Source of the DNA: Octopus bimaculoides
Lineage: Eukaryota
Direction of reading: 5' to 3'
NCBI RefSeq assembly: GCF_001194135.2
Contig: NC_068983.1
Location: 155,435,857-155,496,983, forward strand
DNA length: 61,127 bases
Shown here in pieces: positions 9,469 to 59,880 of this stretch (its first letter is position 1; each line of letters starts with the position of its first letter). Made by a program: the position numbers and the translations under genes. The notes beneath the pieces are model-generated. The model was given only the letters and a program-made list of their open reading frames with translations. It was not told where the DNA came from and searched no databases.

Positions 9469-9488
9469 CATCATCATCGTTATGATGG

Positions 9489-9683
9489 GAGAATCTTTAG
9501 CACACCGGGCGAAATGCTTATCAGTATTTCACTCGCCGCTACGTTCTGAGTTCAAATTCCGCCGAGGTCGACTTTGCGTTCATCATTTCGGGGTCGATAA
9601 ATTAAGTACTAGTTGAGTACTGGGGTCGATGTAATCGATTATGCCCCTCCCCCAATTTTCAGGCCTTATGCCCATAGTAGAAA
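9489..9683 (+). mobile_element. SINE family C copy
   Basis: B-box-like gttcaaattcc, body ggtcgactttg...ggggtcgataaattaagtac, tail ggccttatgcccatagtagaaa; matches 15156-15623. Confidence 0.9.
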
Positions 9684-14612: not shown

Positions 14613-15155
14613 GCATACATCTGTGTAAGTGTATACAGTTCTCTCTTTCCACACACGCATACATAGGTATACACAGACATATTTATAAATAAATGAATGA
14701 ATAAATGATATATATATATATATATATATATAGATAGATAGATAGATAGATAGATAGAGATATAGATATACACACACACACATACATACAAGCAAGCACA
14801 CATATCTGTCTACCTATTATCTGTATATACACGTGTGTGTATGTTTTGTATGTGTGTAAAGGATATTTAATTTACAAAATGACGTCTTACTTTGTTAAAT
14901 TGACAATAAATGAAGTGTAATGTAATATATTTTAGTGTATAAAATATTCGGTAAAAAGAGAACATAGCAAGTAAATAGAAACTTAAAACTTGAAAAAAAT
15001 GTAGAATAAATAGATTTCAAGATGTCGTTAGTGGGTGGCAGAATCGTTAGAGCGTCGCACAGAATTCTATATGGCATTTAAAATTCTTTTACGATCTGAG
15101 CTCAAACCTCGTGAAGTTAAATGACTTATAAAGCGATTAATATACTTTGTAGTAT

Positions 15156-15371
15156 AAGGCAGCAAGCTAGCAGAAACGTTTGCACACCGGTTGAAATGCT
15201 TAGCAGTATTTCGTCTATCTTTGTGTTCTGAGATCAAATTCTGTCGAGGTCGACTTTGCCTTTCATCCTTTCGGGGTCGATAAATTAAGTACCAGTTGCG
15301 TACTGGAGGTCGATCTAATCAACTGGCCCCCTGACCCCAAAATTTCGGGCCTCGTGCCTAGAGTAGAAAAG
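15156..15371 (+). mobile_element. SINE family C, tail type 1
   Basis: A-box-like tagcagaaacgtt, B-box-like gatcaaattct, tail ccctgaccccaaaatttcgggcctcgtgcctagagtagaaaag; flanked by aatatactttgtag repeats. Confidence 0.9.
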
Positions 15372-15389
15372 AATATACTTTGTAGAGTA

Positions 15390-15623
15390 TAGGGCGGTGA
15401 GCTGGCAGAATCGTTAGCACACCGGGCGAAATGCTTAGCGATATTTCGTCTGTCATTACGTTCTGAGTTCAAATTCCGCCGAGGTCGACTTTGCTTTTCA
15501 TCGTTTCGGGGTCGATTAAATAATTACCAGTTACGCGCTGGGGTCGATGTAATCGACTTAATCCCCTTGTCTGTCCTTGTTTGTCCCCTCTATGTTTAGC
15601 TACTTGTGGGCAATGAAGAAATA
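15390..15623 (+). mobile_element. SINE family C, tail type 2
   Basis: tggcagaatcgttag / gttcaaattcc boxes; tail cccttgtctgtccttgtttgtcccctctatgtttagc...gtgggcaatgaagaaataa. Confidence 0.9.
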
Positions 15624-17450: not shown

Positions 17451-17840
17451 GTTGTTGTTGTTGGCACTCCATCGCTTACGACGTCGAGGGTTCCAGTTGA
17501 TCCAATAAACGGAACAGCCTGCTCGTGAAATTAACGTGCAAGTGGCTGAGCACTCCACAGACACGTGTACCCTTAACGTAGTTCTCGGGGATATTCAGCG
17601 TGACACAGTGTGACAAGGCTGGCCCTTTGAATTACAGGCACAACAGAAACAGGAAGAAAGAGTGAGAGAAAGTTGTGGTGAAAGAGTACAGCAGGATTCG
17701 CCACCATCCCCTGCCGGAGCCTCGTGGAGCTTTAGTTGTTTTCGCTCAATAAACACTCACAACGCCCGGTCTGGGAATCGAAACTGCGATCCTACGACCG
17801 CGAGTCCACTGCCCTAACCACTAGGCCATTGCGCCTCCAC
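17451..17840 (-). mobile_element. SINE family A, full length (tRNA-like head, (AAC)n tail)
   Basis: Minus strand starts gtggaggcgcaatggcctagtggttaggg (A box) ... gtttcgattccc (B box) and ends gtgccaacaacaacaac; seven related copies in the window. Confidence 0.95.
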
Positions 17841-19080
17841 CTTTTTCTAGGATGGTAGGTAGAAAGATGTCATTTGCTGGAGATTAGGCTGGTATTTTTT
17901 CTAATAGGTCGAGCGGCTACGTAGGCTTTTTGGTTGCCTTTGTGTTGTTTGAGGATGATAGTGAAGATTATGGTAGGAAGATGAAGTTACAGCACCTAGA
18001 GTGATAATCGTAAATATGATGATGGTGATGACATAAATTCGATGGTGATGTTGATAATGATGATTAAGATGATGATGTCATTGATATTATTGACGATGTT
18101 TACAAGCGTTGCCATCACAGATCATTATTATGATTTTCCTGATTATTTCTAAGATCATATTCGTCCTCTTAATCATTGTCACCATTATAATTCTTAGTGT
18201 AATCTATGTTTTATCTGTTACTGCCACTGACGTCGACATGACAGTTATCTACAAATAATCGTACAACATTTAGTGTTCAACTGGCCATAAATATCTCACC
18301 ATTTGTTAATTTACACATTCTTCTTATCAACATAAATTTGTTTACTCACCCTCCCTATACCCAATCATGCATTCAGCTAAAAAAATATAATCAAAGCGAC
18401 AGCAATAATAATAATTTCTACATACATATTCATATATAGAGATGTGTCTATATGTATATGTGTCTGTTTGTGTGTTTGTGTCTGTATGTGTGAGTGAGTT
18501 TGTGTATGTGTGCGCGTGTGGGTGTACGTGCGTGTGCGTGTGTGTGTTGTGCTTGTTTGTATATATAGGTACAATGCACCGAATAATAAAAATTCGCCTC
18601 GATACTGAGGTGTTCGATTTCACTTCGTAGAATCGCCGACAAAGCGTAAATTTCTATATCCTGATAACCCTTAAAGACGAACCTAGTCGTAACTAGGGTG
18701 TCCTTACCCTAACTATTAGCAGCCGATACTTTGAACGTATCTTGGTGATTACAGTAGGGTAGATAGGCTCGGTAGGATAGGTGACACGCACATTATTGCA
18801 GAGTATAAATCCCTGTTTACCTATATAGTAAGTTTATTTCTCCTTATACGAACAATCACCGTGACAGTTAAGACTTACACTACACACCCATCCTCGATAC
18901 GGTAGCTGTTACGCAACTTGATATCACCGAACCTGTTAACTCCTCAAATGGCAATTGTCGTCGTTGAATTAACGAATCGTAAAGAGCGCTGACTACTTAA
19001 TACCGATGCTCCACTTGATCTGATCTACTATGTGGAGCATATAATGTGATGATCTGTCATCGCTGTGTAGCCAAAGTTTT

Positions 19081-19651
19081 GGATCTTTTTTAAAACGGGG
19101 GCCACATTTTTCATTAACGAAACACTTTGAAACTTGGAACACTGGTAGAATGTGTCATATAAAACATCTTTTTCTCTTAGTCTTCTTCTTAAAAAAAGAA
19201 ATCCCTAAGTTATTCCATGTGAAAGTTGTCGTATTTCTGTAATTTCAACCAATCACTGACGTCCATTCAGCCGATATACATTAAGTGCCGACTACATAAA
19301 CAAACGATTCTGAAACAATTCTATCGGTGATAGGGTTAGGGTTAGTGTTAGGGTTAGGGTAAAACAGCAAATTTAAAAAGAAAAAAGAAAAACGAAGCTA
19401 TGGAAATTAAATACACTTTACACCGCTTAATCAGCCAAAGGAGTAAATGTAAACAACTGAATACTTGTCAGTGATTGATTGAAATTATCGAAATAAGACA
19501 ATTTTTTACATGAAATAAATTCGAATACAAAAATATTTTTCTGTTCTATAACACAAAATAGATAAGTATACGAAGTTTGAAAGTCTTTCGGTACCAAAAA
19601 CACTACGTAAAACATTAATGAAAAATGTGGTCCCCGTTTTAAAAAAGATCC
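19081..19651. mobile_element. Non-autonomous foldback DNA transposon, GGATC termini, 8-bp TSD (Merlin- or hAT-like)
   Basis: 37-bp TIRs with 1 mismatch (ggatcttttttaaaacgggg[g/a]ccacatttttcattaa). TSD aaagtttt at 19073-19080 and 19652-19659. Imperfect inverted arms of about 200 bp around a core with TTAGGG repeats. Confidence 0.9.
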
Positions 19652-19728
19652 AAAGTTTTTAGGTGATAAGAACTGAAGAGTGGAGGTCCAAATACTCTTA
19701 ACTAAAAGTCATTCTAAAATTTCTGTTA

Positions 19729-19819
19729 AATTGTTTTCATTCCGACTCCGTACATCTGAGGATGTAATCGCAAATCGTGTCCTCGTCTTCAGGTGTACGG
19801 AGTCAGGGTGAAGAGAATT
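19729..19819 (+). ncRNA. Candidate pri-/pre-miRNA hairpin
   Basis: 19744-19764 pairs fully with 19784-19804 (21 bp, 3 G-U) around a 19-nt loop; basal stem 19729-19743/19805-19819 adds 13 pairs and 2 mismatches. Confidence 0.45.
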
Positions 19820-20699
19820 CAAAATAAGTTGACGCAGTGTGAAACTGGGTCAACGTGTTTTATACACATACGCACATAAATATATACATACGTATGTGTG
19901 TGTGCGTGTATGAATGTATGTATGTATATGTACTTGTATATGTATATGTAATTAACAGTTCAAGAATGAAATGTAATTCGGCTGTTGACAAGAATCAAAC
20001 CAGTCACCACTTGTTTACTAATCAGGATGGAAGAACTCACTGTTGCACAGCAGGACTTTTCACTGATTAGATAAACATATTATAAATTACAATAATCCAT
20101 TTATATGAGAAAAGCACACACACACTGCAATTCCTTTCTTATTGACGTCAATTACATAATCGAATTTTTAGAAAAGATCCATACGAGAACAAAGTAACAA
20201 AGGCAATAGTAAAAAGAACCAGTACTGATAACAGCGAAGCTAAACAATAAAAACTCACATAATGTTATGATATCTGAACTCGTAGTAAGCAAAACAAACT
20301 TTCATTTCTGCTTTGATGAGGCATGAAATAGGATTTTTATTGTTATATCAATGAATACACGAGCGGATAAGAATGCTGCTATTAAACAAGAACTAACCGG
20401 CATACAATTAAGTAAACCAATGTTATTCAAAAGGCGAACGATTGAGTTGCTGGACTACTTACTTACTCATAGGTCGTGAGTTCAAGATCGCGACAAGAAT
20501 GTCTTTCCATTTATGTGCTGGCTACATTGTTTTACTTTTATATATAAAAATGACATTCATTCAAGCTATCAAAAATAGGAACCAGGCTGTCTGGGAAAAG
20601 GTCAAGAGGGTTGTTCAGACGTAAGGTCGAGCAATTAAATCTATTTATTAGGGAGTGCGTGGGATAAATAAATGTTTATAATTATATATATGTGCGTGC

Positions 20700-21359: not shown

Positions 21360-21772
21360 GGAGTATCTATAAAACCGTCAAAATCAGGTTAATTTTTATG
21401 TTATTTGATTTATTAATAGTGTTGCTTAACATGTTTTTGCTAAAATTGCTGCTTCTTTAAAGATATCATCAGAAAAAGGTAATTAAAATTCATTAAAATG
21501 ACAGATCTATCGGACTTTCAAAGAGGTCAAATTGTTGATACTCGTATGGCAGGTGAGTGTAACGAAAACAGCCGAAATATTTGGTGTATCAAGAAGTACT
21601 GTCTCGAAAGTAATGACAGCCTTTGAGAAAGAGGGAAAAACCTCCTCGTCGAAACAAAACTCTGGAAGAAAACCAAGACTTTCAGATAGGGATCGTCGGA
21701 GTCTTACGCGAATTGTTAGAAAGGATCACAAAAGAAAAGCTCCCAATATTACTGCAGAGCTTAATGACCATG
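21360..21772 (+). mobile_element. Tc1-like transposon, 5' fragment (paired-type HTH DNA-binding region)
   Basis: From ATG 21498: MTDLSDFQRGQIV...SVTKTAEIFGVSRSTVSKVMTAFEKEGKT...SGRKPRLSDRDRRSLTRIVRKDH...ITAELNDH, then abrupt truncation. 5' boundary approximate. Confidence 0.85.
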
Positions 21773-22032
21773 AGTCGAGCGCAACATATATTAACTCATT
21801 TGACTTGACATAGATTATTTCGGAAGTAAGAAACTCAGAGATTACAATATGTAAGCAAATTTAAAACTGCGACCGTGGTCAATATATGACAAGATATGGA
21901 TCATAGTTAAAGAAAGAAGAAAAATCAAATGTAATAATTATAAGTTTAAATACTTATTAGTGTTTAGGCGTGACACATGCTTTACTTGTGTATAATATCA
22001 CGAGCTGGCGCTTGAGTAACCTATACATCAAA

Positions 22033-22416
22033 GTTGTTGGCACTCCGTCGCTAACGACGTCGAGGGTTCCAGTTGATCCGATCAACGGAACAGCCTGCTC
22101 GTGAAATTTACGAGCAAGTGGCTGAGTACTCCACAGACACGTGTGCCCTTAACGTAGTTCTCGGGGATATTCAGCGTGACACAGTGTGACAAGGCTGACC
22201 CTTTGAATTACAGGCACAACAGAAACAAGAAGAAAGAGTGAGAGAAAGTTGTGGTGAAAGAGTACAGCAAGGTTTGCCACCATCCCCTGCTGGAGCCTCA
22301 TGGAGCTTTAGATGTTTTCGCTCAATAAACACTCACAACGGCCGGTCTGGGAATCGAAACCACGATCCTATGACCTCGAGTTCGCTTCCCTAACCACTGG
22401 GCCATTGCGCCTCCAC
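22033..22416 (-). mobile_element. SINE family A, full length with TSD
   Basis: Full head-to-tail match to 17451-17840; 11-bp TSD atacatcaaag at 22023-22033 and 22417-22427. Confidence 0.95.
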
Positions 22417-23081: not shown

Positions 23082-23207
23082 AATCTGAGTGTGTATGTGA
23101 GTGTGTGGATAGAAAGATAGATAGATGCAGTCATGACGAAAAATTGGACCAAATGAGACAAAATAGAGTTTGTCAACAGAGAAAAAAAAATTTGTACAAC
23201 GAACTTT

Positions 23208-23430
23208 GGATCTTTCTGAATTGACGGGTGCCATTTTTTATTTATGTTTTATTCAGTGTGTTTTCTACCGAAACACTTTCAAACTTCGTATACTTGTATA
23301 TTTTGTGTTATAGAACAGATAAAAAAATTTGTATTCGAAGTTATTTCATGTAAAAAATGTCGTATTTCGGTAATATCAACCAATCACTGACGTCTATTGA
23401 GGTGAAAACAATTACTGCTGTGGATTGTAA
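23208..23430. mobile_element. Diverged single arm of the GGATC foldback family
   Basis: Matches the reverse complement of 19455-19651 (ggatcttt...ctttcaaacttcgtatactt...gtgttatagaacag...ccaatcactgacgtc). Confidence 0.8.
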
Positions 23431-23789: not shown

Positions 23790-24053
23790 CTGATCTTACA
23801 TAGATAGAAAGATGGAATAACTTGCTCGTAAAATCAACGTGCAAGTGGCTGAACACTCCACAACCACGTGTACCCTTAACGTAGTTCTCAGGGAGATTCA
23901 GTGTGACACAGAGTGTGACAAGGCTGGCCCTTTGAAATACAGGTACTACTCATTTTCGGCAGTTGAGTTGAGTGAAACAATGTGAAATAAAGTGTCTTGC
24001 TCAAGGACACAATGCGTCACCGGGAATTGAACTCACAACTTTATGATCGTGAA
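23790..24053 (-). mobile_element. SINE family B (family-A 3' half, different 5' half)
   Basis: Shares aacgtgcaagtggctg...cccttaacgtagttctc...gacaaggctggccctttgaa with family A; 5' part has gagttcaattccc and tgtccttgagcaagacactttatttcac. Confidence 0.85.
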
Positions 24054-39880: not shown

Positions 39881-41332
39881 GATTCCAACAATTTCTTCGA
39901 TATTACAATGGGGACATCTGATTCAGCACAGGTGACCGATTTAGTTAGCCTATGCCTCTTTTCGCAGATTAAGGAAAGTTTCTCCTTCTAGTTGGGGTGT
40001 TTTATAGGGATGATGCATTTCTAGCTGTACGGGGTCAGTCTAAAACTGTATTGAATAGATTGAGGAAATCACTGAGTGGTTTATTAAAGGATTTCTTTAA
40101 CCTTAGCATTATTTTTTATGTTAACTCCAGAGTGGTGAACTCCTTGAATGTTACTTTGAATTTGGATACGGGTTTATACTACCCATTTCGTAAGCCAAAC
40201 AAATCCATCTCATATACCAATGTCTCCGCTAATCATCCGAAATCCACTATTGATAGTATCGTTACTGCTATCTCGATCAGAATCTCTAACTTGTCCGCAA
40301 ACGAAGAGATTTTTTATCAACATGCGCCGGTATACAACAACGCTCTAAAATTAAGCGGCTTCAAACTAAAATCTCATATATACCTAACACGAGATTTAAA
40401 AACAAAATGGCTGGTCTACCACCTGACCATGTCGCGGATAGTCAGGAGAAATGCAATGCATTATCTGATTACAATCAATATAAGCCATCAGTTAGACACG
40501 TATATAAATATGTTAGGAATAGATACTGGAAGCGAAACAGTGGTTGTGAGGAGATGAGTAAAACCAAGAGCTCATGTTATAGAATACAGGAAGACATATG
40601 GTCGACTCCACTTTTTTCCCTTAGAGTAAGAAACTTGCCCAAGCTATTTTTTAGGATTCTGAAGGAGAATTTCCTAAAGAATCATAAATACTACAACATC
40701 TGCAGTAAGTCCCCCATCAAATTTTCTTACTCAGTAATGCCAAATTTGGCCTTCTTTATTGCATCTATAAATAGAAGCAAATTAAATGGTCAAGTGCACA
40801 GGAAGTATTCTTCTGCTGGAAACCCTGGTATTGGGCAGGTAAGCTCTAATACGCCTAAGGTTAGTGCTACAAACCATTTGCACCCACCGGTCTTATCGAA
40901 CCCCAGTAATGAAATATGTGAAGGAAAGAATGCAGGAAGCCAAATAAGTAATGTTAGGATTAGTAATAAGGTTAGGGATGGTACTTGTAAATCCTGTAAT
41001 TGTAGAAACTCTGGATTATGTCCCCTTGATGGATTCTGTCTCACTACTAATGCCATATATAAATGCGTTGTTAAAGAGAAGGGTAATTTGGATAAGTTTT
41101 ATATAGGCAGTACTGTAAATTTTAAGGCTAGGTGTAGAGCCCACATGAATTCGTTTTCGAACGAAAGATACTGTAACGCTAATACACTTGCCTCTTATAT
41201 ACATGGTTTAAAGAGGAATAATAAAAGTTACTCTCTTGAATGGTCTGTTATATCGAGGGCCTCTTATTTCAGAGTTAATATTAATAAGTGTAAGTTATAT
41301 GTAAGGGAATCCCTTGCCATCCTTAAGTTTGT
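39881..41332 (+). mobile_element. Penelope-like element: RT C-half plus GIY-YIG endonuclease, frameshifted, truncated at both ends
   Basis: FFDITMGTSDSAQVTDLV, FYRDDAF, VNSLNVTLNL..G.YYPFRKPN..ISY..V.ANHP, KFSYSVMPNL, CNCRNSGLCPLDGFCL...IYKC...FYIGST..FKARCRAHMNSF, YSLEWSVI, KCKLYVRE. Confidence 0.92.
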
Positions 41333-41753
41333 TGTGCCATACTTCTTTCCTCTAGTATAGAACGTCGTGAGGTCCTTTATGTCCTTTAGGCGCTCCTCCA
41401 CTGCTTCCACCGTAGCTATTTCTACCTTTCTAGTTGCTGTGGACAGCGTTCTATTGACTACCGTCCTTTTTGTCGTCTTCTCTGTCACTTCTTTCGACGG
41501 GGTCAGCCTCAGGCTGGTACCCTCCTTTACGATGAGTTCATTAAACTCCATCAATCTTTTCTCCTCAAATTTCACTTCTCTCACTTGTAGTACATTTGCA
41601 GTCAAACCCTTTCCGGTTGCTGCAGCATAGCTACCTGGTTAGACCTCCATTTTGTTTCGTTTGTTGCAACTTCACCCATAAAATGGGGAAGAAAACAATT
41701 AGGCAAAATAGCATTTAATAATTCAACAATTCAATAATTAGCATTAAGTACGG
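41333..41753 (-). mobile_element. gag/ORF1-like element copy 1 (5' fragment)
   Basis: Inverted nucleotide homolog of 43477-43920, from the leader ccgtac...ttttcttccccatttatgggtgaagtt to RGKKYGT. Confidence 0.85.
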
Positions 41754-41973
41754 GAGATCTTCAAAAACACGTCATACTCATACTATGCCGCATGGATAAT
41801 TTAAAGATAAACCCATCACAGGACCAGTCCAAATTTTCTAACACTAAAAGAAAAACGAATTATTTCATTGCTAAACATGCAGTTGGCTGTTGTTAATAGA
41901 AATTTTAACTCGCTGGTTTCGAAACCCCGTAAAACTAAATACCTCCACTGGTACCATTCTTTCTAAAAGTGAA

Positions 41974-43342
41974 CAATGAACTGAACTATTGAGAACAGTC
42001 GAAGTTATGGATAAGGAACTGGAAATGAGGAATAGGAAGTTTGCAGGCGTCACCAGAGAGTCGGATGATAATGTCGAAATTGAAATAGGAAAGTATAAAA
42101 ATCTTCTAAGTCGGGATGGTTACAACGTCCAAGTAACCCTTCACCCCCACCCGCAAGAAACAACGAACAAAATGAAAGGAAGAACGGTGACATATAAAAC
42201 TTACTCAATTAAGGCAGGAAAAGTGGATCATATGACAACAGAGCAAGTGGAGAAGGCAGTGAGGCTAATCTGGCAAGAGATAGTATATCTTGCCAGAGGG
42301 TCGATGTATGGAGAGGTAGAGGTCAGATTTAAAAAAGGAAACAGCTAAAAAAACACTCGGCAATATCATTAAGGAACGAGGAGATAGTACTTCTACCCAC
42401 GTATCTGGGACAGAGAGCGTCTCAGGTAAAGGTGGAAGGAATTCCACCAGAGATAGATGTGGCCTGGATAGCAGCCACTGTCATGGTTGGTATCGAGGAC
42501 AAGATCGCTGTGCTCCAGGCCACAAAAACGAAAAGTGTTAACTGGAGAGGCCAAACGTTGAACATGATTATTCAAGGTTCAAAAGAGACGATAGAAGACA
42601 TGGTTGCGCCGATAACAGTAAACGAAACAATAATGAATGTAAGGGTGGAGGGCAGAATCCCTCGCTGTTTTAAATGTGGCCTGAAGGGCCACATAAGAGT
42701 GAAATGCCCTCCACCGGTCAAAGAAGCTGAGAAAACGCAAGAAGAAGATCCCCAGGAGAAGCCATAGGAGAAGCTCCAGGAAGGAAAAGAAGAAGAAAGA
42801 ATGGTACCAGTGGAGGCAGAAAAAGAAAAGGCAGAGGAAGAGTGGGAAATCACGAGAAAAAGAAAAAGAAGGAAGAGAAAAAAGGTAAGTCCAACGCATA
42901 CAGAACCCCACCATACAACTACTCAATGCCCACCCATAGTCTCTTTGTCCCACCCTCTCCCTGCAGACACTAAGCCTCCCCACTTTCATCCAACACAAAA
43001 ACAAAAAAGAACACCTAAAAATAATTCGCAAATTTTCCTTCTCACTGTTTTGCGTGTGTGCTGTGTGAAGACTTGGAAGATGAACTGTTTGTAAGGATGA
43101 CTGAATGGGAAAACACAGGATATGTTGGTGGAGAAGATGAGGAGAGTATTGCTGGAGAACATACGTGTTTATTAATAACAGAACAACAAACGAATGAAAT
43201 AATAGGATACAAAGTAGAATGTGAGCTGTGGAAAGTAGACTACTACATGGGAAAATCACCAAAGTCTATAGAATATAAAGAACTGAAAAAAAAAAAAACA
43301 GAGGAAAAGGAAGTAAGTGATGTTACTTGGTGGGGCAAGTAA
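41974..43342 (+). mobile_element. gag/ORF1-like element copy 2 with CCHC zinc knuckle, frameshifted
   Basis: GRTVTYKTYS, ARGSMYGEVEVRF, LLPTYLGQRASQVKVEGIPPEIDVAWIAA, CFKCGLKGHIRVKC (42666-42707), then an E/K-rich tail; no endonuclease or RT downstream. Confidence 0.75.
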
Positions 43343-43476
43343 CACCATTTTCATTTCATTTCTCATTTTCAATTTTCATTATATCATAAGTTTTATTTAT
43401 TTTTTTATTTGTTATATGTCCCCAAATGTGTTGTATTGTCCCTCTTTGTTGGCCCTTTATGGGTAATAAAGAAACA

Positions 43477-44830
43477 CCGTACATAATGTTAGTTATCGAA
43501 TTGTTGAATTGTTGCATTATCGAATTGTTAACTGTTATTTTGCCTAACTGTTTTCTTCCCCATTTATGGGTGAAGTTGTTACAAACGAAATAATGGAAAG
43601 CCAGCCAGGTCCAGCCGATAGCTATGCTGCAGTAACTGGAAAATGTTTGACTGCAGATATATCTCAAGTGAGAGAAGTAAAACTAGACGAGAAGAAATTG
43701 AAAAGGTTTAACGAACTCATAGTAAAAGAAGGTGACAGCCTGAGGTTAAACCCCGCAGAAAGAAGTGACAGACAATACAACTAAAAGGACAGTAATTTAT
43801 AGAACGCTGTCCACAGCAACCAAAAAGATCGAAATAGCTAAAGCAGAAGCAGTAGAAGAATGTCTAAAGGACATTAAAAGCCTCACGACATTCTATACTA
43901 GAGGCAAGAAATATGGCACAGTGGAGGTTCGTATCACGAGAGAACAAGAAGCGATAAAGCACTCTACTGTGTCGTTGAGGCCGTCTGAGTGGGCACTACT
44001 GCCAACCAACTGTGGCAAATGTGCTGCCAGAATTAGGATTAGCAGAGTGACCCCGGAGATTGACGAGGCGTGGCTGGTGGCAGCCATCCTCTACAACACG
44101 GAAGAAGAAACGAAAATTCTGAAAGTCACAAGAACGACGGTAGTAAACTGGTGGGGATATGGCCTCGAGCTGACGGTCCAAATCAGTTTACCGGATTTAC
44201 ATAAAATTGCAGAGGAGGTCATGTTGCCCGAGGAGATGAAAGTAAGAGTGGTAGTGGAGAAGTAAAGGCCAGTAAGCGAAAAGAATATAGAAAATGTGGA
44301 AGAAAAGTGTACGGCAGGAAAGAGAAATAAGAAAAGAGAGAGAAACGTGGATTCACCACCCAAGAGTCCGCTGAAAAAGAGAAAGGAAAACGTAGAGGAG
44401 ACTCAGGGTGTGATATCAGCTATACCAAAAGAGGAGAAAGTGAAGGTGCAGAAAAGAAAGGAAGATAGAAGAGGGATGCCAACAATACTGGGTGAGAGAG
44501 ATGCAGAGAAGAAAGAGATGGCGATACCAGTAGCATCAGAAGAGACTAATGATGGAAAACAAGAAGAAGTGCAGAAAGGGAAACACTTACGGACTATGAT
44601 AGAGTATAAAAGAAGTGTAGAAATTGAGAAAAAAATCATCAAGATGAAACATGTAATTAGGGTTAAATTAGCGGCGAATGAGTGTAACGAAGGCTTTAGA
44701 GCAGTCTTGCTTGAGAAAGAGAGAGGAGAGAAGTTGAAGGAAATGTTTGGAGAGAAGATAAAAATATCGCCGATACAGGTTCGGTTTGACGAGTTGCCAC
44801 TTGTGGTGGAATTTCAGGATTTAATATAGT
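43477..44830 (+). mobile_element. gag/ORF1-like element copy 3 (knuckle missing), frameshifted
   Basis: MGEVVTNE..DSYAAVTGK, KRTVIYRTLS, TRGKKYGTVEVRI, LLPTNCGKCAARIRISRVTPEIDEAWLVAA align with copy 2; after VRVVVEK* the CCHC is absent. Confidence 0.75.
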
Positions 44831-44845
44831 ATATATTGTAAAGGA

Positions 44846-45104
44846 GTATAGGCGCGTGGCTTAGTGGTTAGGGTGTCGGCATCATGATCGTAAGATTGTG
44901 GTTTCGATTCCTGGACCGGGCGACGCGTTGCGTTCTTGAGCAAAACACTTCATTTCACGTTGCTCCAGTCCACTCAGCTGGCAAAAATGAGTAATGCTGC
45001 GATGGACTGGCGTCCCGTCCAGCTGGGGCACACACGCCATTGAAACCGGGAAACCGGACCCATGAGCATGGCTAGGCTTTAAAAGGGCGCATTTATTTAT
45101 TTTT
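44846..45104 (+). mobile_element. SINE family E (tRNA head, Meta/V-like core) with 14-bp TSD
   Basis: A box tggcttagtggtt, B box ggtttcgattcct, core gctgcgatggactggcgtcccgtccag, ATTT-type tail; TSD tatattgtaaagga at 44832-44845 and 45105-45118. Confidence 0.9.
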
Positions 45105-45606: not shown

Positions 45607-46148
45607 ACATATGAATATAAAACTAGACGAGTACTGCTAGAATATTCTTGAACACAGGAATACTCCATCAAAATAGCTAAACGACGAAAATAATGACAAT
45701 AGCATCTACTCTGATCTAGAAATTCAGTGAACAAAAGTATTCCAGCTACGACCATCTCGTCTTTTTGTTAGGAGAACCACATGCGTTTGCTCAGCCTGCT
45801 AGAAAAAGCAGCCAAGTCGCTTACAAATCATACGTTTGTGTCTCAAAAATCTGAAGGATTTTATGAGTGATATAACCTCAGACTCTATTGATAAAGATAA
45901 TGAATAAAGATAATGATGGCGCTGGTAGGAACGTCTTCGATCGAAGGTCTACTGTACGAGAACAGCATTGCGGCTAAACAACAATAACACTATTTTCAGT
46001 GGGTCATCTATATGCTGTATATAATAGAGAACGGTAAAACGAAAGCCAAAAATACGATCAAAATTATAATAGTTTGTTACTTGGAGAAATGGAAAGAGCT
46101 ACTTCTAATGTTTCTCATACTGTCCTCGTAAAGAATATATGTAGAGAA

Positions 46149-46365
46149 AAGGCAGCGAGGCTGCAGAATCGTTATCGCTCAGGGCAAAATACTTAGTGGC
46201 ATTTCGTCCGTCATTACGCTGAAATTCTGCCGAGGTCAACTTTGCCTCTCATCCTTTCGGGGTTAATAAAATAAGTAAGTACAAGTTGAATACTGAGGAG
46301 AATGTAATCGACTTACCCGTTCCTCTGAAGTTCCTGGTCTTGCGCCTTAAATTTGAAACCAATAT
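46149..46365 (+). mobile_element. SINE family C, diverged
   Basis: ggcagcgaggctgcagaatcgtta...aaattctgccgaggtcaactttgcc...tgtaatcgactta. Confidence 0.8.
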
Positions 46366-46600
46366 ATGTAGAGAAAAAAAAAAGGGAAAACGAAAAATGA
46401 TAAAAAAACATGTAAAAGATAAAATTTAGGTAAAAATCTCCGTTGTCGTCCTGATATAATATGCTATCATTATTTAACCCCGAAGAAACCTCCGAATAAA
46501 AGTGTTCTAACAATAACTCCATGATGTCAGTTTTACTCACAATAAAAATGTCTAACTTCGTAAAATGCTTAATTAATTATTTGTTCTGAGTTATGCAATT

Positions 46601-46904
46601 GTTGTTGTTGGCACTCCGTCGCTTACGACGTCGAGGGTTCCAGTTGATCCGATCAACGGAACAGCCTGCTCGTGAAATTAACGTGCAAGTGGTTGAGCAC
46701 TCCACAGACACGTGTACCCTTAACGTAGTTCCCGGGCATATTCAGCGTGACACAGTATGACAAGGCTGACCCCTTTGAATTACAGGCACAACAGAAACAA
46801 GAAGTAAGAGTGAGAGAAAGTTGTGGTGAAAGAGTACAGCAGGGTTCGCCACCATCCCCTGCCGAAGCCTCGTGGAGCTTTAGGTGTTTTCGCTCAATAA
46901 ACAC
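46601..46904 (-). mobile_element. SINE family A, head lost in gap
   Basis: (GTT)n-ggcactccgtcgcttacgacgtcgaggg... matches the other copies. Confidence 0.95.
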
Positions 46905-48220: not shown

Positions 48221-48474
48221 TTCTTCTTCTTCTTCTTCTTCTTCTTCTTCTTCTTCTTCTTCTTCTTCTTCTTCTTCTTCTTCTGCTTCTTCTTCTTCTT
48301 CTTCTTCTTCTTCTTCTTCTTCTTCTTCTTCTTCAATAATAATAATAGTAATAATTTATTTCTTTATTGCCCACGAGGAGCTAAGCATAGAGGGGACAAA
48401 CAAGGACAGACAAAGGGATTAAGTCGATTACATCGACACCATTGCGTAACTAGTACTTATTTAATCGACCCCGA

Positions 48475-48531
<57 letters not shown>

Positions 48532-50604: not shown

Positions 50605-51161
50605 TCTTCGAACAATTGACGAACTTGTTGATATGATTGGTGTACCCTGGAGCTCCTGCTAACAAATTTTCAGAGAGGAATTGCAAATGAAAAGTGTTGC
50701 AGCAAAATTTGTGCCTCGCTTACTCACGGAAGATCAAAAGCAATCACGACTTAATGCGTGTCGTGAACTAAAAGAACAGTTGGATGTTGGTCCTGGTGAT
50801 GAAAGCTATTGCTGCGGCTACAACTTGGAGACGAAGCAGCAATGAAGTCAGTGGAAGCATTCAAAGGAAGTTCAATGTCAAGACGATACTGATTTGTTTT
50901 ATCGATGCGAAAGGAATGAAAAAAATCCCTTAAAGGAAAACGCTTTGTGGATGTGGAAGAGGTGAAGAAAAAACGGTAGAGGCATTAAACGGCATCACTT
51001 TGGAAGAGTTTCAGGACTGCTTCGAACAATGGAAAGTGCGTCTGGACTGATGAATTGCTTCAAATAGAGAATACTTTGAATGCGATAAAAGTGTAAACAT
51101 GTAAAACTTAGTGAATAAAGTAATATTGCAACATTCCGGTTTCTTTTGAGTAGCCTCTCGT
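50605..51161 (+). mobile_element. Mariner transposon remnant, internally deleted
   Basis: RTIDELVDMIGV, AAKFVPRLLTEDQKQSR (WVPREL-like), GDES..GYNLETKQQ, KTILICFIDAKG, LKGKRFVDVEEVK, FEQWKVRLD*; right TIR ...ttttgagtagcctctcgt. Confidence 0.85.
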
Positions 51162-53711
51162 GACTACTTATATTCTAAATTAAAGAACAAGTAATTTGGT
51201 TGATTGAACAACTGAATCCGCATCGTCGAAATTGACGAAGATCCTTTTACTTACTGCTTACGTAAGAATAGATGGTCAGAAAGATAGATGTCTCTCCATT
51301 TCTTTTTTAAATTCTTTGACATCTTCTTTTAAAGAAACGGTGGATTTCTCTCAAAGAAACATGTCTATAACCGGAATTTAGATAACGGCAGTAGTAAAGA
51401 ATTTATGGATGGAATTTTCGAAGAGTCTTGCACAGTACCGTTGTTCTGCTCGTGAATTAAATTTTCAGAACGTGCTTTAAATATTCACTTTATTAGCTTT
51501 TCTAGATCTCTGGTGAAGCACTTATTATCATCACTAAGTGTGCCAATGATTATCGGTAAATGTAAATGGTAATTTTTAATGCGTATGGAGAAGACGTAGG
51601 CTTTGAAGCAGTTGGAAATAAAGATTTTCTTTCAATTCCTATTTTCAATAAAATATATATTGATCTTGAGATCAGCTATACATATGTATAAGCATTTGTT
51701 CTATTTTATATGTATGTATGTCCATATAAATTATGTACGTGAGTGTGTACATATGAATGAATGTATGCATGTTTGAATGTAATTTCATCACAGAATTCCT
51801 TCCAGCTGGTTACTAGCAAAATCTCAAGACATTTTGTTTTATTCATGATAGTTTCAGTGATTTGTTTGACTAGTTCTAGATTTGTTATGCTTATACCAGA
51901 TTGTTGTTTTCAATGCAATGTTCCATTAGTATTCTTTATTTTTAGAGATGTAATATTTCGGTTCTGGTGCATTTAGAAAATGACATTTAACAAGGTACAG
52001 TGACTTTAGTATCTTTCAGTGAGGAATAGACTCGAACGCCTTCAGTCACATAGTCTTAGATTCCAGTACAATAACATAGTCTTAGATTCCAGTGATGCTG
52101 CTTCGCTTCTTTAAGGTCAATGTTAGTGAAGAAGAAACGTTTAGCACAGCTCAATACTCCTTTCTTCTGTCTTGTTTACTCATCAATCACCACGTCGTTT
52201 GTTTCACACATTTAATCAATCGTACTGTGTTTATACATAGCATATAAGTAATTTACGCGCCTGTAGGTCTTTGGCTACATGCTCAAAGCTGACTGTGCAA
52301 ATGTCATCCTGTCTGCCACATCAAGTTCATCGCCCATTGTTTTTTTTCTTTTTTCTTGTCTTTTGCTTTAACAAGTTGGCAAAAACTTTTGTATAATGTG
52401 AGCTTGCTATACCAATAACTGACTATCAACTCGCTCTTCATTATTTTAATGACTCTAACAAGAATCTCAATGTACGTATTAATGCATTTATTATGTATGT
52501 ACCTGTATATGTAAGTATGAATGTATGCACAGATGGATGGATTGATGGACACATAGATCAATCAATGGATGTATAGTTAATAAAAATCTTGATTATGATT
52601 TAAACAATATATAAAAATGACTTTACTATATATAGTTTCAAAATATGCATTTTACCTGCTTTACTTTTTGGCTGTGAAACCTATTCAAAACATGTTAAAC
52701 GGTGGAATGTTTGCACCTTCGACAAATTGTGCACATGGTGAGACTATGTGAATGTAGAGAAGCTCCTCTTCGATGTAGCTGATCGATATAGCAGACTATG
52801 TAGTTCGTATGGAAGATGAATGAATATCAAAAACGTCTGCTCTACTAAGGACTATGTTCTTTGAAAAGATCCCCTCTCAAACAGAGAATAAGATACAAAG
52901 ACAAGAGATAATATTTGTGGAAAACAAATATGCTCAATATGTCCAAGCATTTTGAAGAGATCGCGTTAAATATGTAAAACGCGAACGAGTCACAAGCAAA
53001 TTTCATGGATGTATCGTTCTTTTAAATGTTGAACTGACTTACGAATTTGTTTTTCTAAAGCAATCTTTTTACATAAAGCAAACTAACAATAGCTAACCAC
53101 CAAATAAAAGATCACACGTCGACCAATAATTCAACGAAGTTGTTGTCATTCAGCTCTCTGTCTGAAGAAACGCATATCAGCACACAATTCTAATTGCCAT
53201 AATTCTGCATTGCATTTAATTGAGAAGAGACATTCATATGATAGTTGAGGTAGAAACTAAAAATCAACATCTGGACTAAAAATTGATTCTCGTTTTACAG
53301 CTTATTAACAAGCAGCTATTCCACGCATTAGTATGCCGACTTATATAATGCATAAATGCGTATATGTAGGTATTCATTTTTGTATGTATGTATGCCTGCC
53401 TGTGCAACTCAGATTCTTCCTGTAACGTTATATATATAATTTCTGTGGAATTTTCAATTGTTTACTGAACAATTTAACGATTTGGTAGCTCTCTTCATCG
53501 AACACTTGAAACATATTTTACTAAAATCGATGTGAGGTCTATTTACTTTATATATATGAAGCATACACATGCACACACAGATTATTGTGAAATTCTAATT
53601 CACTCTGACTTTATCATAAATTTCACTCTACTCTCAATATTGAGCTCCCTCCACACATCAGTAAATGTTCTGCTGCTATTTTAAACCTAGCTTGTAAATA
53701 ATCCTTTCTTC

Positions 53712-53880
53712 TATAGGAACAAGGCCTGAAATTTCATGGGATGGGGTATATCATATCGACCCCAGTGATCAACTGGTATTTATTTTACCGACCTTGAAAT
53801 AATGAAAGGCAAACCTGACCTCGGCAGAATTTGAACTCAGAACGTAAAACCAGAAAAAAAAGTCGTTAAGCATTTTGTAC
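53712..53880 (-). mobile_element. SINE family C, diverged
   Basis: Reverse-complement match (gaccccagtgatcaactggtat...ctcggcagaatttgaactcagaacgtaaa). Confidence 0.8.
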
Positions 53881-54467: not shown

Positions 54468-54835
54468 TGTGGCACTCCGTCGGTTACGACGACGAGGGTC
54501 CCAGTTGATCCGATCAACAAAACAGCCTGCTCGTGAAATTAACATGCAAGTGGCTGAGCACTCCACAGACACATGTACCCTTAACGTAGTTCTTGGACAC
54601 TGAGTGTGACAAGGCTGGCCCTTTGAAATATAGGCACAACAGAAACAAGAAGAAAGAGTGAGAGAAAGTTGTGGTAAAAGAGTACAGCAGGGTTCGCCAC
54701 TGCTCCTGCCGGGTCTTCGTGGAGCTTTAGATGTTTTCGCTCAATAAACACTCCCAACACCCTGTCTGGGAATCGAAACAGCGATGCTACGCCTGCGAGT
54801 CCGCTGCCCTAACCACTGGGCTATTGCACCTCCAC
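54468..54835 (-). mobile_element. SINE family A, full length with TSD
   Basis: Head-to-tail match with a small internal deletion; TSD ttataaatat at 54458-54467 and 54837-54846. Confidence 0.92.
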
Positions 54836-55387
54836 ATTATAAATATATGTGTTACGGACTCCTATATGCTAGAAATAGATGCCGAATCACCTAACCACGA
54901 AGAATATGTTCTCAAGAAAAAAATTTCAGCGAGTCACCAGACTGTAAAGGGAAGACAAATGAAAATATACAAAAAAAACAAAAAAAACGATTAACCTACG
55001 TACCATTGGTTTCACCTGTTAATATTTACACAAGAGTCGATTTATAAAATATAATTTCCAGAACTAGACACAGAACGTTCACCCGAAAGGGAGCATGTGT
55101 AAAGTTTTGCAAATTACATTCAGTGTATCTTTTCAAATGTCTTCAATCTGGTGCGCTGAGGCCGGAAATAACTCTGCAGTTAATAAATTTGTGCAGCTAA
55201 TTTACCGGTTTGAGAACATCGTTATCTAAAAATTTAATAATAAGGGTAGAAATTGATATTAATCAATTAAAACCAGTGGTCTATCATATTTTAAAAAATC
55301 TGAAGATTAAAATTATATTACATACAAAATTAAGAGGAATGACCAGCAAAAGTGGACTCCTATATGCTAGAAATAGATGCCGAAGGA

Positions 55388-56607
55388 TTCAGAATGCACC
55401 ATCAGAAGATTTGTGCATGACGACATCCGGTACAAGTCGTACATGGTTTGGAAGAGGGTCAATTTATGTTGGATGTGACACGAGAGAATCGTGCGATGCG
55501 TGCAGAACTCTTAATAAACAAGTTAAAACACCAAGAGATTAGAATGGTTTGGTTATTCTTCAATAAGAGAAACCTCGACCATGAGGTATACGGAAGGAAC
55601 GACAGATGGTTATGCAGAAACCCGAATGTCATTCCAAGCGTCATGCATACTAAGTTCCCAGTAACTAGTGGTTCTGTGAGTACTCGCCAACGAGTGAGAT
55701 GACATGCCTCCACAATTTATTTTCACATGAATAAGGGTCAATGCCGCTGTCTACACAGAGGTGTTGTAGAAAGTTCTGAGGCCCGAATAATCAGAGTACG
55801 CAACGGAAGAGCGTACGTCTTCCAACAAGACTCTGCGCCGTCTCATACGGCTAGGACGACCCAAGCAAGGATGCATGCCGATCTCCATGGTTATTTCTTC
55901 CCAGACCCATGGTTTTCTAGCTCATCGGACCGCAATCAACTGGACAATTGGATCTTTTTTAAAACGGGGGCCACATTTTTCATTAACGAAACACTTTGAA
56001 ACTTGGAACACTGGTAGAATGTGTCATACAAAACATCTTTTTCTCTTAGTCTTCTTAAAAAAAAAAGAAATCCATAAGTTATTCCATGTGAAAGTTGTAT
56101 TTCTGTAATTTCAACCAATCACTGACGTCCATTCAGCCGATATACATTAAGTGCCGACTACATAAACAAACGATTCTGAAACAATTAACCCTAACCCTAA
56201 CCCTAACCCTAGGGTTAGGGTTAGGGTTAGGGTTAGGGTTNNNNNNNNNNNNNNNNNNNNNNNNNNNNNNNNNNNNNNNNNNNNNNNNNNNNNNNNNNNN
56301 NNNNNNNNNNNNNNNNNNNNNNNNNNNNNNNNNNNNNNNNNNNNNNNNNNNNNNNNNNNNNNNNNNNNNNNNNNNNNNNNNNNNNNNNNNNNNNNNNNNN
56401 NNNNNNNNNNNNNNNNNNNNNNNNNNNNNNNNNNNNNNNNNNNNNNNNNNNNNNNNNNNNNNNNNNNNNNNNNNNNNNNNNNNNNNNNNNNNNNNNNNNN
56501 NNNNNNNNNNNNNNNNNNNNNNNNNNNNNNNNNNNNNNNNNNNNNNNNNNNNNNNNNNNNNNNNNNNNNNNNNNNNNNNNNNNNNNNNNNNNNNNNNNNN
56601 NNNNNNN

Positions 56608-58089: not shown

Positions 58090-58256
58090 ACTTTGTGCCA
58101 GTGTTAGTAGAAATGAGTACCAGCTGAGCCTTGGGATTCCCTTAGCCTTACACTTTTTCAGGGTCGATAAAATAAGTACCAGTCAAACACTGGCTCGATG
58201 TAATCGACTATCCTCCTCCCCATAACATTTCAGGCCTTGTTCCTATAATAGAAAGG
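58090..58256 (+). mobile_element. SINE family C 3' part
   Basis: gggtcgataaaataagtaccag...tcgatgtaatcgact...ggccttgttcctataatagaaagg. Confidence 0.75.
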
Positions 58257-58383
58257 GTTGTTGTTGTGATTCTTCTTCTTCTTCTTCTTCTTCTTATTCT
58301 TCTTCTTCTTCTTCTTCTTGTATCAGCAGCATGCCGGTTCGAGCTGGTGGCATATCTTTTCGTTTATTAATATATTCAAAAGT

Positions 58384-58560
58384 TAAGGCGGCGATCTGGC
58401 AGAAACGTTAGCACGCCGGGCGAAATGCTTCGCAGTATTTCGTCTGTCTTTACATTCTGAGTTCGAATTCCGCCGAGGTCAACTTTCCCTTTCATCCTTT
58501 TGGGGTCGATAAATTAAGTACCATTTACGCACTGGGGTCGATGTAATCGACTTAATCCGT
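58384..58560 (+). mobile_element. SINE family C, young copy running into gap
   Basis: taaggcggcgatctggcagaaacgttagcacgccgggcgaaatgc...gttcgaattccgccgagg. Confidence 0.92.
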
Positions 58561-59708: not shown

Positions 59709-59880
59709 AGGTGGCGAGGTGTTAGCGCGTACAACGAAACGGTTAGCGCCATTTCTTCCAAATTGTTATATTCTGAGTTCAAATTCCACCATGGTCGATT
59801 TTGTTTTTCATCCATTAGGATCGAAGAAGTAAATACCAGTTGAGTACTGGCGTCGATGTAATCGAGTATCCACCCAACTA
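59709..59880 (+). mobile_element. SINE family C, diverged
   Basis: ttctgagttcaaattccaccatggtcgattttg...gagtactggcgtcgatgtaatcgag. Confidence 0.75.

What the first reader, a model, noticed from the sequence alone, without database searches (positions are those of the whole stretch)
19729..19819. 36-bp pri-miRNA-like hairpin with strand-biased G-U pairing
Seen: gactccgtacatctgaggatg (19744-19764) pairs at all 21 positions with cgtcttcaggtgtacggagtc (19784-19804) around a 19-nt loop. A basal stem extends this to 36 positions with only 2 true mismatches. Six non-Watson-Crick pairs are G-U on the + strand and would be A-C on the - strand, which suggests selection on RNA structure rather than a decaying DNA palindrome. 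The geometry (about 35-bp stem, about 60-nt precursor, unstructured flanks) fits a Microprocessor substrate. I do not recognise either arm as a conserved miRNA, and I see no CNNC motif at the usual spacing. Coleoid cephalopods are known to have many lineage-specific miRNAs.
Basis: partly seen in the sequence, partly recalled or inferred. Interest (0 to 1): 0.7.

Follow-up and report, generated by a model that had tools for sequence, protein, structure and literature searches.

The report
Single-copy miRNA-shaped hairpin in octopus DNA
A real and unusually stable 91-base hairpin in transposon-rich octopus DNA has the shape of a microRNA precursor, but nothing available here shows that it is expressed, conserved or part of a known microRNA family, so it remains an ordinary unproven candidate.

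Summary
Bases 19729-19819 fold on the + strand into one hairpin: 36 stem positions (28 Watson-Crick, 6 G·U, 2 mismatches) and a 19-nt loop, at -51.9 kcal/mol (z = -10.3). The - strand reaches only -31.0. It is the most stable 95-nt fold among 22,014 windows, and the only top scorer not made of microsatellite.

It is single-copy in the window and unrelated to the MITE, SINEs or other repeats nearby. TE protein fragments in the window best match Octopus bimaculoides, so the cephalopod assumption is supported.

The geometry suits Microprocessor: about 13 bp of lower stem, about 22 bp of upper stem, open flanks, and an apical UGU in one register. There is no CNNC, no consistent basal UG, no Rfam family, and no match to published octopus miRNA seeds.

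The G·U bias is really 6:1. It is nominally unusual under simulated neutral decay (p about 0.006-0.07), but the locus was chosen for exactly this property.

Expression, conservation and genome-wide copy number could not be tested, because the collections hold no cephalopod DNA.

My probabilities:
- Young local inverted duplication, i.e. proto-miRNA raw material: about 0.5.
- Genuine lineage-specific miRNA: about 0.25.
- MITE copy: about 0.15.

The parts
19729..19819 (+). Whole hairpin: 36-position stem plus 19-nt loop, with the + strand as the well-folding strand
   Evidence: MFE -51.9 kcal/mol, z = -10.3; the most stable 95-nt fold in the window.
19729..19764 (+). 5' arm. Lower stem 19729-19742, C-A mismatch at 19743, upper stem 19744-19764. 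Carries U at 5 of the 6 G·U pairs.
   Evidence: Pair table.
19765..19783 (+). Apical loop, 19 nt (UAAUCGCAAAUCGUGUCCU), with a 3-bp internal mini-stem. UGU spans the arm/loop junction at 19763-19765.
19784..19819 (+). 3' arm
19743..19764 (+). Predicted 5p product, CGACUCCGUACAUCUGAGGAUG. Inferred only; the register is uncertain by about ±3 nt.
   Evidence: Inference from about 13-14 bp above the basal junction and about 22 bp below the apical junction (distances from PMC6004053). No read data.
19786..19807 (+). Predicted 3p product and likely guide strand, UCUUCAGGUGUACGGAGUCAGG (5' U, weakly paired A-U/G·U 5' end, seed CUUCAGG). Inferred only.
   Evidence: for the register. Strand choice is inferred from the standard 5'-U and end-stability rule. 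No read data.

Best explanation
It is a single-locus inverted duplication. A stretch of about 36 bp was copied in reverse orientation next to itself, leaving a 19-nt spacer. This most probably happened in one step, through a replication template switch or fold-back. The two copies have since picked up eight point substitutions and no indels. The locus lies in transposon- and microsatellite-rich, apparently non-coding octopus DNA. It has no demonstrated function of its own. Its + strand transcript would nevertheless be a competent Microprocessor/Dicer substrate: Drosha would cut about 13 bp above the base (near 19742/19743 and 19807/19808), giving a pre-miRNA of about 65 nt, and Dicer would cut near the loop, giving a 22-nt duplex in which the 3p strand is the likely guide. 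In other words it is proto-miRNA raw material, and any small-RNA output depends entirely on whether the + strand is transcribed. Shown here: the structure, its rarity in the window, single copy in the window, no known family, and an octopod host. Inferred: the origin by template switching, the cut sites, the guide strand, and the absence of selection.
For: The hairpin is real and extreme for this window. It is single-copy in the window even by sensitive search, and its arms and flanks are unrelated to the adjacent mariner-type MITE, the SINE families or any other repeat here. No clean target-site duplication was found. The arms are adjacent, in register and free of indels, with a short spacer, which is the product expected of a template-switch event (PMC10710096). 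Only about 0.9% of miRNA-sized hairpins made this way in human genic regions are annotated miRNAs, and a promoter is the limiting factor. No exon, host gene or neighbouring miRNA-like hairpin was seen within ±5 kb. There is no Rfam family, and none of 18 candidate seeds appears among the published octopus miRNA seeds. If decay was neutral, the arms diverged about 37 My ago on the O. vulgaris TE clock, which is near the O. vulgaris/O. bimaculoides split. A robustly expressed miRNA of that age had a fair chance of being caught by the two-species annotation of PMC9699675. Two of the eight differences are plain CpG transitions.
Against: The substitutions are not random. Six of the eight keep pairing on the + strand as G·U, which happens in only 0.6-2.6% of neutral simulations at kappa 2-4, and the 20.9 kcal/mol gap between strands in about 1%. 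The upper, mature-duplex part of the stem is better preserved than the lower part (3/21 against 5/15 differences). Stem length, loop size, open flanks and an apical UGU all match Microprocessor preferences. Species-specific miRNAs were excluded by design from the published octopus set, and the held seed files are truncated, so absence from them is weak evidence. Transcription and genome-wide copy number were not testable.
Confidence: 0.5

Rival explanations
1. It is a genuine, young, Octopus-lineage- or species-specific canonical miRNA gene transcribed from the + strand. Drosha/DGCR8 and then Dicer release a 22-nt duplex, and purifying selection on the RNA stem has allowed only G·U-type changes.
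For: A 36-position stem, 19-nt loop and open flanks. An apical UGU at 5p positions 22-24 when the lower stem is 13 bp (definitions). Both plausible 3p registers begin with U. The 6:1 G·U bias and the 20.9 kcal/mol strand asymmetry are rare under neutral decay. The upper stem is more conserved than the lower. The host is an octopod, a lineage with a documented large gain of novel miRNA families, and species-restricted ones were deliberately left unreported (PMC9699675).
Against: No expression or conservation evidence could be obtained. There is no CNNC, and no basal UG in a register consistent with the UGU. There is no Rfam hit above noise (26.6 bits against a gathering score of 76). No candidate seed is in the published list, and one is listed explicitly as a non-seed control. 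No host gene, promoter or cluster partner was seen. The base rate is about 1%. The G·U statistic is inflated by how the locus was chosen.
Confidence: 0.25
2. It is one copy of a very short palindromic MITE (two TIRs of about 36 bp around a short core), like the 80-bp Made1 element. Any strand bias is chance, and copies elsewhere in the genome would share the arms.
For: The anatomy is almost the same as Made1, which has two 37-bp TIRs around 6 bp (PMC1784062). The window is rich in Tc1/mariner remnants, and a mariner-derived MITE sits 70 bp upstream. Octopus genomes carry many Tc1-mariner, unclassified TIR and MITE families. AATT at both ends can be read as a 4-bp target-site duplication around an 83-bp palindrome, and TA directly precedes the left arm.
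Against: No second copy, even a diverged one, exists in about 56 kb of non-N sequence that holds 7-9 copies each of other repeat families. The arms are unlike the TIRs of any transposon present. AATT is self-complementary, so it is equally well explained as stem, and the right flank reads CA, not TA. The arms differ by 22%, yet no relatives are nearby.
Confidence: 0.15
3. It is a mirtron: an 83-nt intron (19733-19815, GU...AG) whose splicing releases the pre-miRNA without Drosha.
For: GT at 19733-19734 and AG at 19814-19815 bracket the stem exactly at the G-G mismatch.
Against: The 5' splice site GTTTTC is far from GURAGU. The last 18 nt before the AG are only 28% pyrimidine and the site reads GAG. 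Both flanks have stop codons in all three frames and no coding signal.
Confidence: 0.02

Closest known systems
Lineage-specific canonical miRNA genes of coleoid cephalopods (90 novel families in Octopus; Zolotarov et al. 2022, PMC9699675)
   Same: Octopod host. A single hairpin with a stem of about 35 bp, a loop of at least 10 nt and open flanks. Sequence unrelated to miRNA families outside the lineage.
   Different: Those loci are defined by small-RNA reads from both arms and by presence in two octopus species. This locus has neither kind of evidence here, and none of its candidate seeds is in the published seed lists.
Template-switch-generated hairpins and the primate miRNAs derived from them (Mönttinen et al. 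2023, PMC10710096)
   Same: A short sequence and its inverted copy lie side by side and form a near-perfect hairpin of miRNA size. The locus is single-copy, with no transposon hallmarks.
   Different: About 99% of such hairpins are not annotated miRNAs.
Made1 MITE / hsa-mir-548 family (Piriyapongsa and Jordan 2007, PMC1784062)
   Same: A palindrome of about 80-90 bp made of two arms of about 36-37 bp, forming a very stable hairpin. Mariner-type elements are present in the same genome region.
   Different: Made1 is multi-copy, has TA target-site duplications and matches Hsmar1 TIRs. This hairpin is single-copy in the window, has no clean duplication, matches no local TIR, and has a 19-nt rather than 6-nt core.

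Membership tests
Canonical animal miRNA gene (Ambros 2003 / Fromm 2015 MirGeneDB-type criteria, cited from established knowledge) | Hairpin with at least 16 paired nucleotides between the arms and a stem of about 35 bp | tested here: met
   34 of 36 positions paired (28 Watson-Crick + 6 G·U). The 35-bp preference is cited in PMC10710096.
Canonical animal miRNA gene | Apical loop of at least about 8-10 nt and single-stranded basal flanks | tested here: met
   19-nt loop. In the centroid of the 231-nt fold the flanks next to 19729/19819 are unpaired. This is a prediction only.
Canonical animal miRNA gene | Reads of 20-26 nt from both arms | not testable with these tools
   No small-RNA data are accessible.
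Canonical animal miRNA gene | 2-nt 3' overhangs at the Drosha and Dicer cuts, and 5'-end homogeneity | not testable with these tools
   Needs read stacks. Only hypothetical registers could be drawn.
Canonical animal miRNA gene | Conservation of the hairpin in related species | not testable with these tools
   Attempted. Arm pattern scans gave only chance single-arm hits in Bacteroidales contigs. ORF handles were not on record. A chimeric ORF search gave 0 hits.
Canonical animal miRNA gene | Accessory processing motifs: basal UG at -14/-13, apical UGU about 22 nt from the cut, CNNC 16-18 nt 3' of the cut (PMC6004053) | tested here: inconclusive
   UGU is met only for a 5p start at 19742. UG is met only for starts at 19738 or 19746. 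CNNC is absent in every register. The motifs are not obligatory (about 79% of conserved human pri-miRNAs have at least one), and their use in cephalopods was not established here.
Any described miRNA family (Rfam 15; octopus seed lists) | Significant match to a family model, or a shared seed | tested here: not met
   Nothing reaches gathering score in the window. The best hit on the hairpin is mir-4716, 26.6 bits against 76. 0 of 18 candidate seed sites are listed as seeds (files truncated). Neither arm is in any searchable paper.
MITE | Terminal inverted repeats | tested here: met
   Met trivially, because the whole element is a palindrome.
MITE | Target-site duplication flanking the TIRs | tested here: inconclusive
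   The only direct repeat is AATT/AATT, which is self-complementary and equally part of the stem. The flanks read TA on the left and CA on the right.
MITE | Multiple dispersed copies, and TIRs related to an autonomous element | tested here: not met
   Within the window there is no other copy and no similarity to local Tc1/mariner/MITE termini. Genome-wide copy number was not testable.
Mirtron | Hairpin ends coincide with functional splice sites between exons | tested here: not met
   GT/AG are present, but the 5' splice site is GTTTTC, the tract before the AG is 28% pyrimidine, and the flanks have stops in all frames.
Template-switch (TSM) hairpin | An inverted copy adjacent to its template, with an outgroup or ancestor that lacks the inversion | not testable with these tools
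   The adjacent inverted copy is seen. No outgroup sequence is available.

The most novel reading that the evidence does not exclude
A previously unannotated miRNA gene restricted to Octopus or to one species, born from a local inverted duplication about 20-40 My ago, whose arms have since diverged almost only by G·U-preserving transitions. That would be a clean single-locus example of RNA-level purifying selection acting on a de novo miRNA in the lineage with the largest invertebrate miRNA expansion.
Probability: 0.25. Interest if true: 0.4.

Novelty: new member of a known kind. Interest (0 to 1): 0.25.

Why it matters
If it is processed, it would add one young miRNA to the already documented octopus expansion. 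It would also give a tidy case of how such genes arise from a local inverted duplication and are then kept foldable by wobble-only drift. If it is not processed, it is one of the many structurally competent hairpins an animal genome holds, which illustrates why structure alone, even with a suggestive G·U bias, does not identify a miRNA. Either way it does not change current understanding.

Tried and rejected
1. Rfam on the locus (E-value mode) and on the whole window (gathering mode). Only generic or microsatellite-driven sub-threshold miRNA hits came back.
2. Arm pattern scans of the metagenome, prokaryote-genome and viral collections. These gave two plus two single-arm hits in Bacteroidales contigs and none in viral contigs. 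The one hit I could fold has no partner arm, and a handful of matches is expected by chance. These collections hold no cephalopod DNA.
3. Spurious ORFs over and beside the hairpin, used as handles to fetch orthologous loci. Exact look-ups found nothing, and a 716-aa chimeric query of all local ORFs gave 0 hits.
4. TE ORFs used as handles. The Penelope-like ORF gave one distant hit. A TE chimera identified O. bimaculoides proteins, but their genes are not on record, so no extra octopus DNA could be fetched.
5. Supplements of the octopus miRNA paper. They hold no full miRNA sequences (positive control), so the arm search is a weak negative. The seed lists were used instead. The MirGeneDB 3.0 and MirMachine papers have no held supplements.
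6. A 10-mer (19761-19770) shared with seven sites. It proved to be the core of an unrelated SINE, with no similarity beyond the 10-mer.
7. The mirtron reading was rejected.
8. Membership of the adjacent TIR element was rejected. All copies of that element end at about 19657-19659, before the hairpin.
9. An assembly artefact is unlikely, since the arms differ at 8 of 36 positions and the nearest N gap is 930 bp away.

Full report
**1. The observation**

On the + strand, 19729-19819 folds into a single hairpin of -51.9 kcal/mol. The z-score is -10.3 against 200 dinucleotide-preserving shuffles, and none of the shuffles folds as well. The reverse complement reaches only -31.0 kcal/mol (z = -5.2).

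The pair table gives 36 stem positions:
- 28 Watson-Crick pairs
- 6 G·U pairs (19735/19813, 19740/19808, 19741/19807, 19755/19793, 19760/19788, 19763/19785)
- one G-G mismatch (19733/19815)
- one C-A mismatch (19743/19805)
- a 19-nt loop (19765-19783) with a 3-bp mini-stem inside it

In a 231-nt context the same hairpin forms, and in the centroid structure the bases next to its foot are unpaired.

I folded all 22,014 N-free 95-nt windows on both strands. This hairpin is the most stable of them (-52.6; mean -14.1, sd 7.0). It is also the only top scorer not built from TG/CA/TA microsatellite or a telomere-like palindrome.

One correction is needed. The C-A mismatch would be a G·U pair on the - strand, so the strand bias is 6 of 7, not 6 of 6. 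The binomial p is 0.0625 one-sided and 0.125 two-sided.

**2. Where it sits**

The window is a draft eukaryotic assembly:
- 12 N gaps totalling 4,884 N
- about 34% G+C
- dense microsatellites
- many transposon remnants: Tc1/mariner-type transposase fragments, a GIY-YIG (Penelope-like) ORF, gag-like CCHC ORFs and two SINE families

A chimeric query of the TE protein fragments found two significant hits, both UniRef proteins of Octopus bimaculoides, at 69% and 48% identity.

I found no convincing host-gene exon anywhere in the window. No other miRNA-like hairpin lies within ±5 kb; the other stable folds there are microsatellites or tRNA-like SINE heads.

Seventy bases upstream lies a 587-bp element with 45-nt terminal inverted repeats (19073-19659). 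It has two other copies in the window, one of them next to mariner-like transposase fragments. All of its copies end before the hairpin.

**3. Copy number and relatives**

Neither arm recurs in the window with up to 3 mismatches. Sensitive searches (blastn-short, nhmmer) found no diverged copy of the hairpin or of 19660-19860.

One 10-mer at the arm/loop junction recurs seven times. Those sites are the core of an unrelated SINE, and the similarity stops at the 10-mer.

Outside the window I could not test anything:
- A degenerate arm pattern found only single-arm matches in Bacteroidales contigs and none in viral contigs. The one I could fold has no partner arm, and a handful of such matches is expected by chance.
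- ORFs over and beside the hairpin, and TE ORFs, are not on record as gene products.
- A 716-aa chimera of every local ORF found no homologue.
- The O. bimaculoides proteins found have no retrievable genomic locus.

**4. Is it a known miRNA?**

- No Rfam family reaches its gathering score in the window.
- On the hairpin itself the best match is mir-4716, at 26.6 bits against a threshold of 76, which is generic hairpin similarity.
- Neither arm occurs in any searchable paper.
- The held supplements of the octopus miRNA study contain no full miRNA sequences. A let-7/miR-1 control search also finds nothing, so the absence of the arms there says little.
- Those supplements do list seed-match 8-mers. 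None of 18 candidate seed sites, covering every plausible 5p and 3p register, is listed as a seed, and one appears explicitly as a non-seed control.
- The files were truncated in storage, and the study reported only families present in two octopus species. This is a moderate negative for a conserved, robustly expressed miRNA and no evidence against a species-specific one.

**5. Fit to the Microprocessor**

[quoted passage not shown] I scored every register.
- A 5p start at 19742-19743 gives 13-14 bp of lower stem and 22-23 bp of upper stem.
- With a start at 19742, UGU falls exactly at 5p positions 22-24.
- The basal UG fits only other registers (starts at 19738 or 19746).
- CNNC is absent throughout.
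- Both plausible 3p products start with U.
- For the 19743 register the duplex is CGACUCCGUACAUCUGAGGAUG / UCUUCAGGUGUACGGAGUCAGG. By the usual 5'-U and end-stability rule, the 3p strand would be the guide. This is inference only.

The structural criteria that can be read from sequence are met. The accessory motifs are inconclusive. The defining criteria (reads from both arms, 2-nt overhangs, 5' homogeneity) cannot be tested here.

**6. Does the G·U bias show selection?**

I simulated neutral decay of a perfect 36-bp palindrome by eight substitutions.

| Transition bias (kappa) | P(at least 6 changes are wobbles on the same strand) |
|---|---|
| 1 | 0.0006 |
| 2 | 0.006 |
| 4 | 0.026 |
| 8 | 0.068 |

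A strand energy gap of at least 20.9 kcal/mol arises in 0.6-1.1% of runs (kappa 2 and 4). This is nominally unusual, and it is the best argument for RNA-level constraint.

Four things temper it:
- The locus was selected from a scan because it pairs well on the + strand, and the lower stem was delimited with G·U-tolerant rules. The core 21 bp alone (3 of 3 differences are wobbles) gives only p about 0.03-0.07.
- A genome with thousands of decaying palindromes will contain many 1% outliers.
- Two of the eight differences are ordinary CpG transitions. One produced a G·U pair (19763/19785) and one the C·A mismatch (19743/19805).
- Strand-asymmetric mutation in transcribed DNA pushes the same way. 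This point rests on established knowledge and was not tested here.

The upper stem is better preserved than the lower (3/21 against 5/15 differences), which is the direction a miRNA would predict, but the numbers are small.

**7. Origin and age**

The arms are adjacent, in register and free of indels, with a short spacer. There is no clean target-site duplication. The only candidate, AATT/AATT, is self-complementary and so is equally part of the stem. TA precedes the left arm, but CA follows the right arm.

This is the product expected of a replication template switch, which can create a complete hairpin in one event (PMC10710096). In that study only 57 of 6,054 miRNA-sized hairpins created this way in human genic regions (0.9%) are annotated miRNAs, and a promoter was the limiting factor.

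The arm-to-arm JC distance is 0.264, or 0.13 per arm. On the O. vulgaris TE clock (JC 0.09 about 25 My; 0.2 about 56 My; PMC13282606), that gives about 37 My if decay was neutral. This is close to published estimates for the O. vulgaris/O. bimaculoides split.

**8. Alternatives**

MITE. The anatomy is nearly that of Made1, the 80-bp palindromic MITE (two 37-bp TIRs around 6 bp) that gave rise to the hsa-mir-548 family (PMC1784062), and mariner-type elements are abundant here. However, there is no second copy in about 56 kb of sequence that carries 7-9 copies each of other repeat families. The arms also match no local TIR, and the target-site duplication is ambiguous.

Mirtron. GT at 19733 and AG at 19814-19815 bracket the stem. 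But the 5' splice site is GTTTTC, the tract before the AG is only 28% pyrimidine, and the flanks have stop codons in every frame. I reject this reading.

Assembly artefact. This is unlikely for arms that differ at 8 of 36 positions.

**9. Verdict**

The hairpin is real, rare and shaped like a pri-miRNA on one strand. It belongs to no known family, and nothing obtainable here shows expression or conservation.

I weighed a base rate of a few per cent at most against a likelihood ratio of perhaps 5-10 from the wobble bias. My estimates are:
- about 0.5 that it is a young local inverted duplication with no established function (proto-miRNA raw material)
- about 0.25 that it is a genuine lineage-specific miRNA
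- about 0.15 that it is a copy of a short palindromic MITE
- the remainder for other readings

Even in the best case it would be one more member of a known kind. The interest is modest, and two routine look-ups would settle it: a genome-wide BLAST and small-RNA read mapping.

Noticed in passing
19073-19659 (copies 55948-56186 and 23202-23391): A 587-bp element with 45-nt, 93%-complementary terminal inverted repeats and TA after its right end. One copy abuts mariner-like transposase fragments (55201-55996), so it looks like a mariner-derived MITE. It ends 70 bp before the hairpin and does not include it.
   Followed up: partly
19348-19359; 56189-56238: Telomere-type repeats inside that element: (TTAGGG)2 in one copy and a (CCCTAA)3...(TTAGGG)4 palindrome in another, which runs into an N gap at 56241. 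The palindrome forms one of the most stable folds in the window.
   Followed up: no
949-1150, 17457-17840, 22033-22416, 23814-23949, 26777-27085, 46599-46904, 54470-54838; head-like piece 44850-44922: A SINE family of about 300-380 nt with a tRNA-like head (A- and B-box-like GGCCTAGTGGTTAGGG ... TTCGATTCC) in at least 7 copies at 86-96% identity. ARAGORN calls none of them a tRNA. The pair that flanks the hairpin region (17457 and 22033) is simply two such copies, not LTRs.
   Followed up: partly
about 9486-9683, 15139-15620, 30755-30925, 46130-46315, 48360-48476, 53698-53875, 58141-58558, 59735-59865: A second SINE-like family with the conserved core GGGGTCGATGTAATCGACTTA. It shares only a 10-mer with the hairpin's arm/loop junction, which is a coincidence.
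   Followed up: yes
40290-41357 (+), with upstream ORF 39973-40554: An intact 356-codon open frame with a GIY-YIG nuclease domain (Pfam E = 1.6e-4, just under the cutoff), typical of Penelope-like retroelements. It has only one distant homologue (25% identity) in the 5.8-billion-protein collection.
   Followed up: partly
41267-44829: Gag-like ORFs with a CCHC zinc knuckle (CFKCGLKGH at about 42690) in inverted, partly duplicated arrangement. The TE chimera that included these ORFs best matches O. bimaculoides UniRef A0A0L8G4Z0, a CCHC-type protein, at 69% identity. This is the evidence for the taxon.
   Followed up: partly
21483-21810 (+); 50663-50842 (+): Degenerate fragments resembling Tc1-like (HTH region) and mariner-like transposases, judged by eye from the ORF translations.
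   Followed up: no
19860-19950: Sub-threshold Rfam hits to mir-297, mir-3149, mir-1277 and others (up to 46.9 bits, E = 6e-7) fall on a TG/TA microsatellite right next to the hairpin. These are low-complexity artefacts, not a miRNA cluster.
   Followed up: yes
19828-19855: A small 6+4-bp hairpin (GUUGAC-GCAGUGUGAAACUGG-GUCAAC) lies 9 nt downstream of the main hairpin. It is too short to be a Drosha substrate and its significance is unknown.
   Followed up: no
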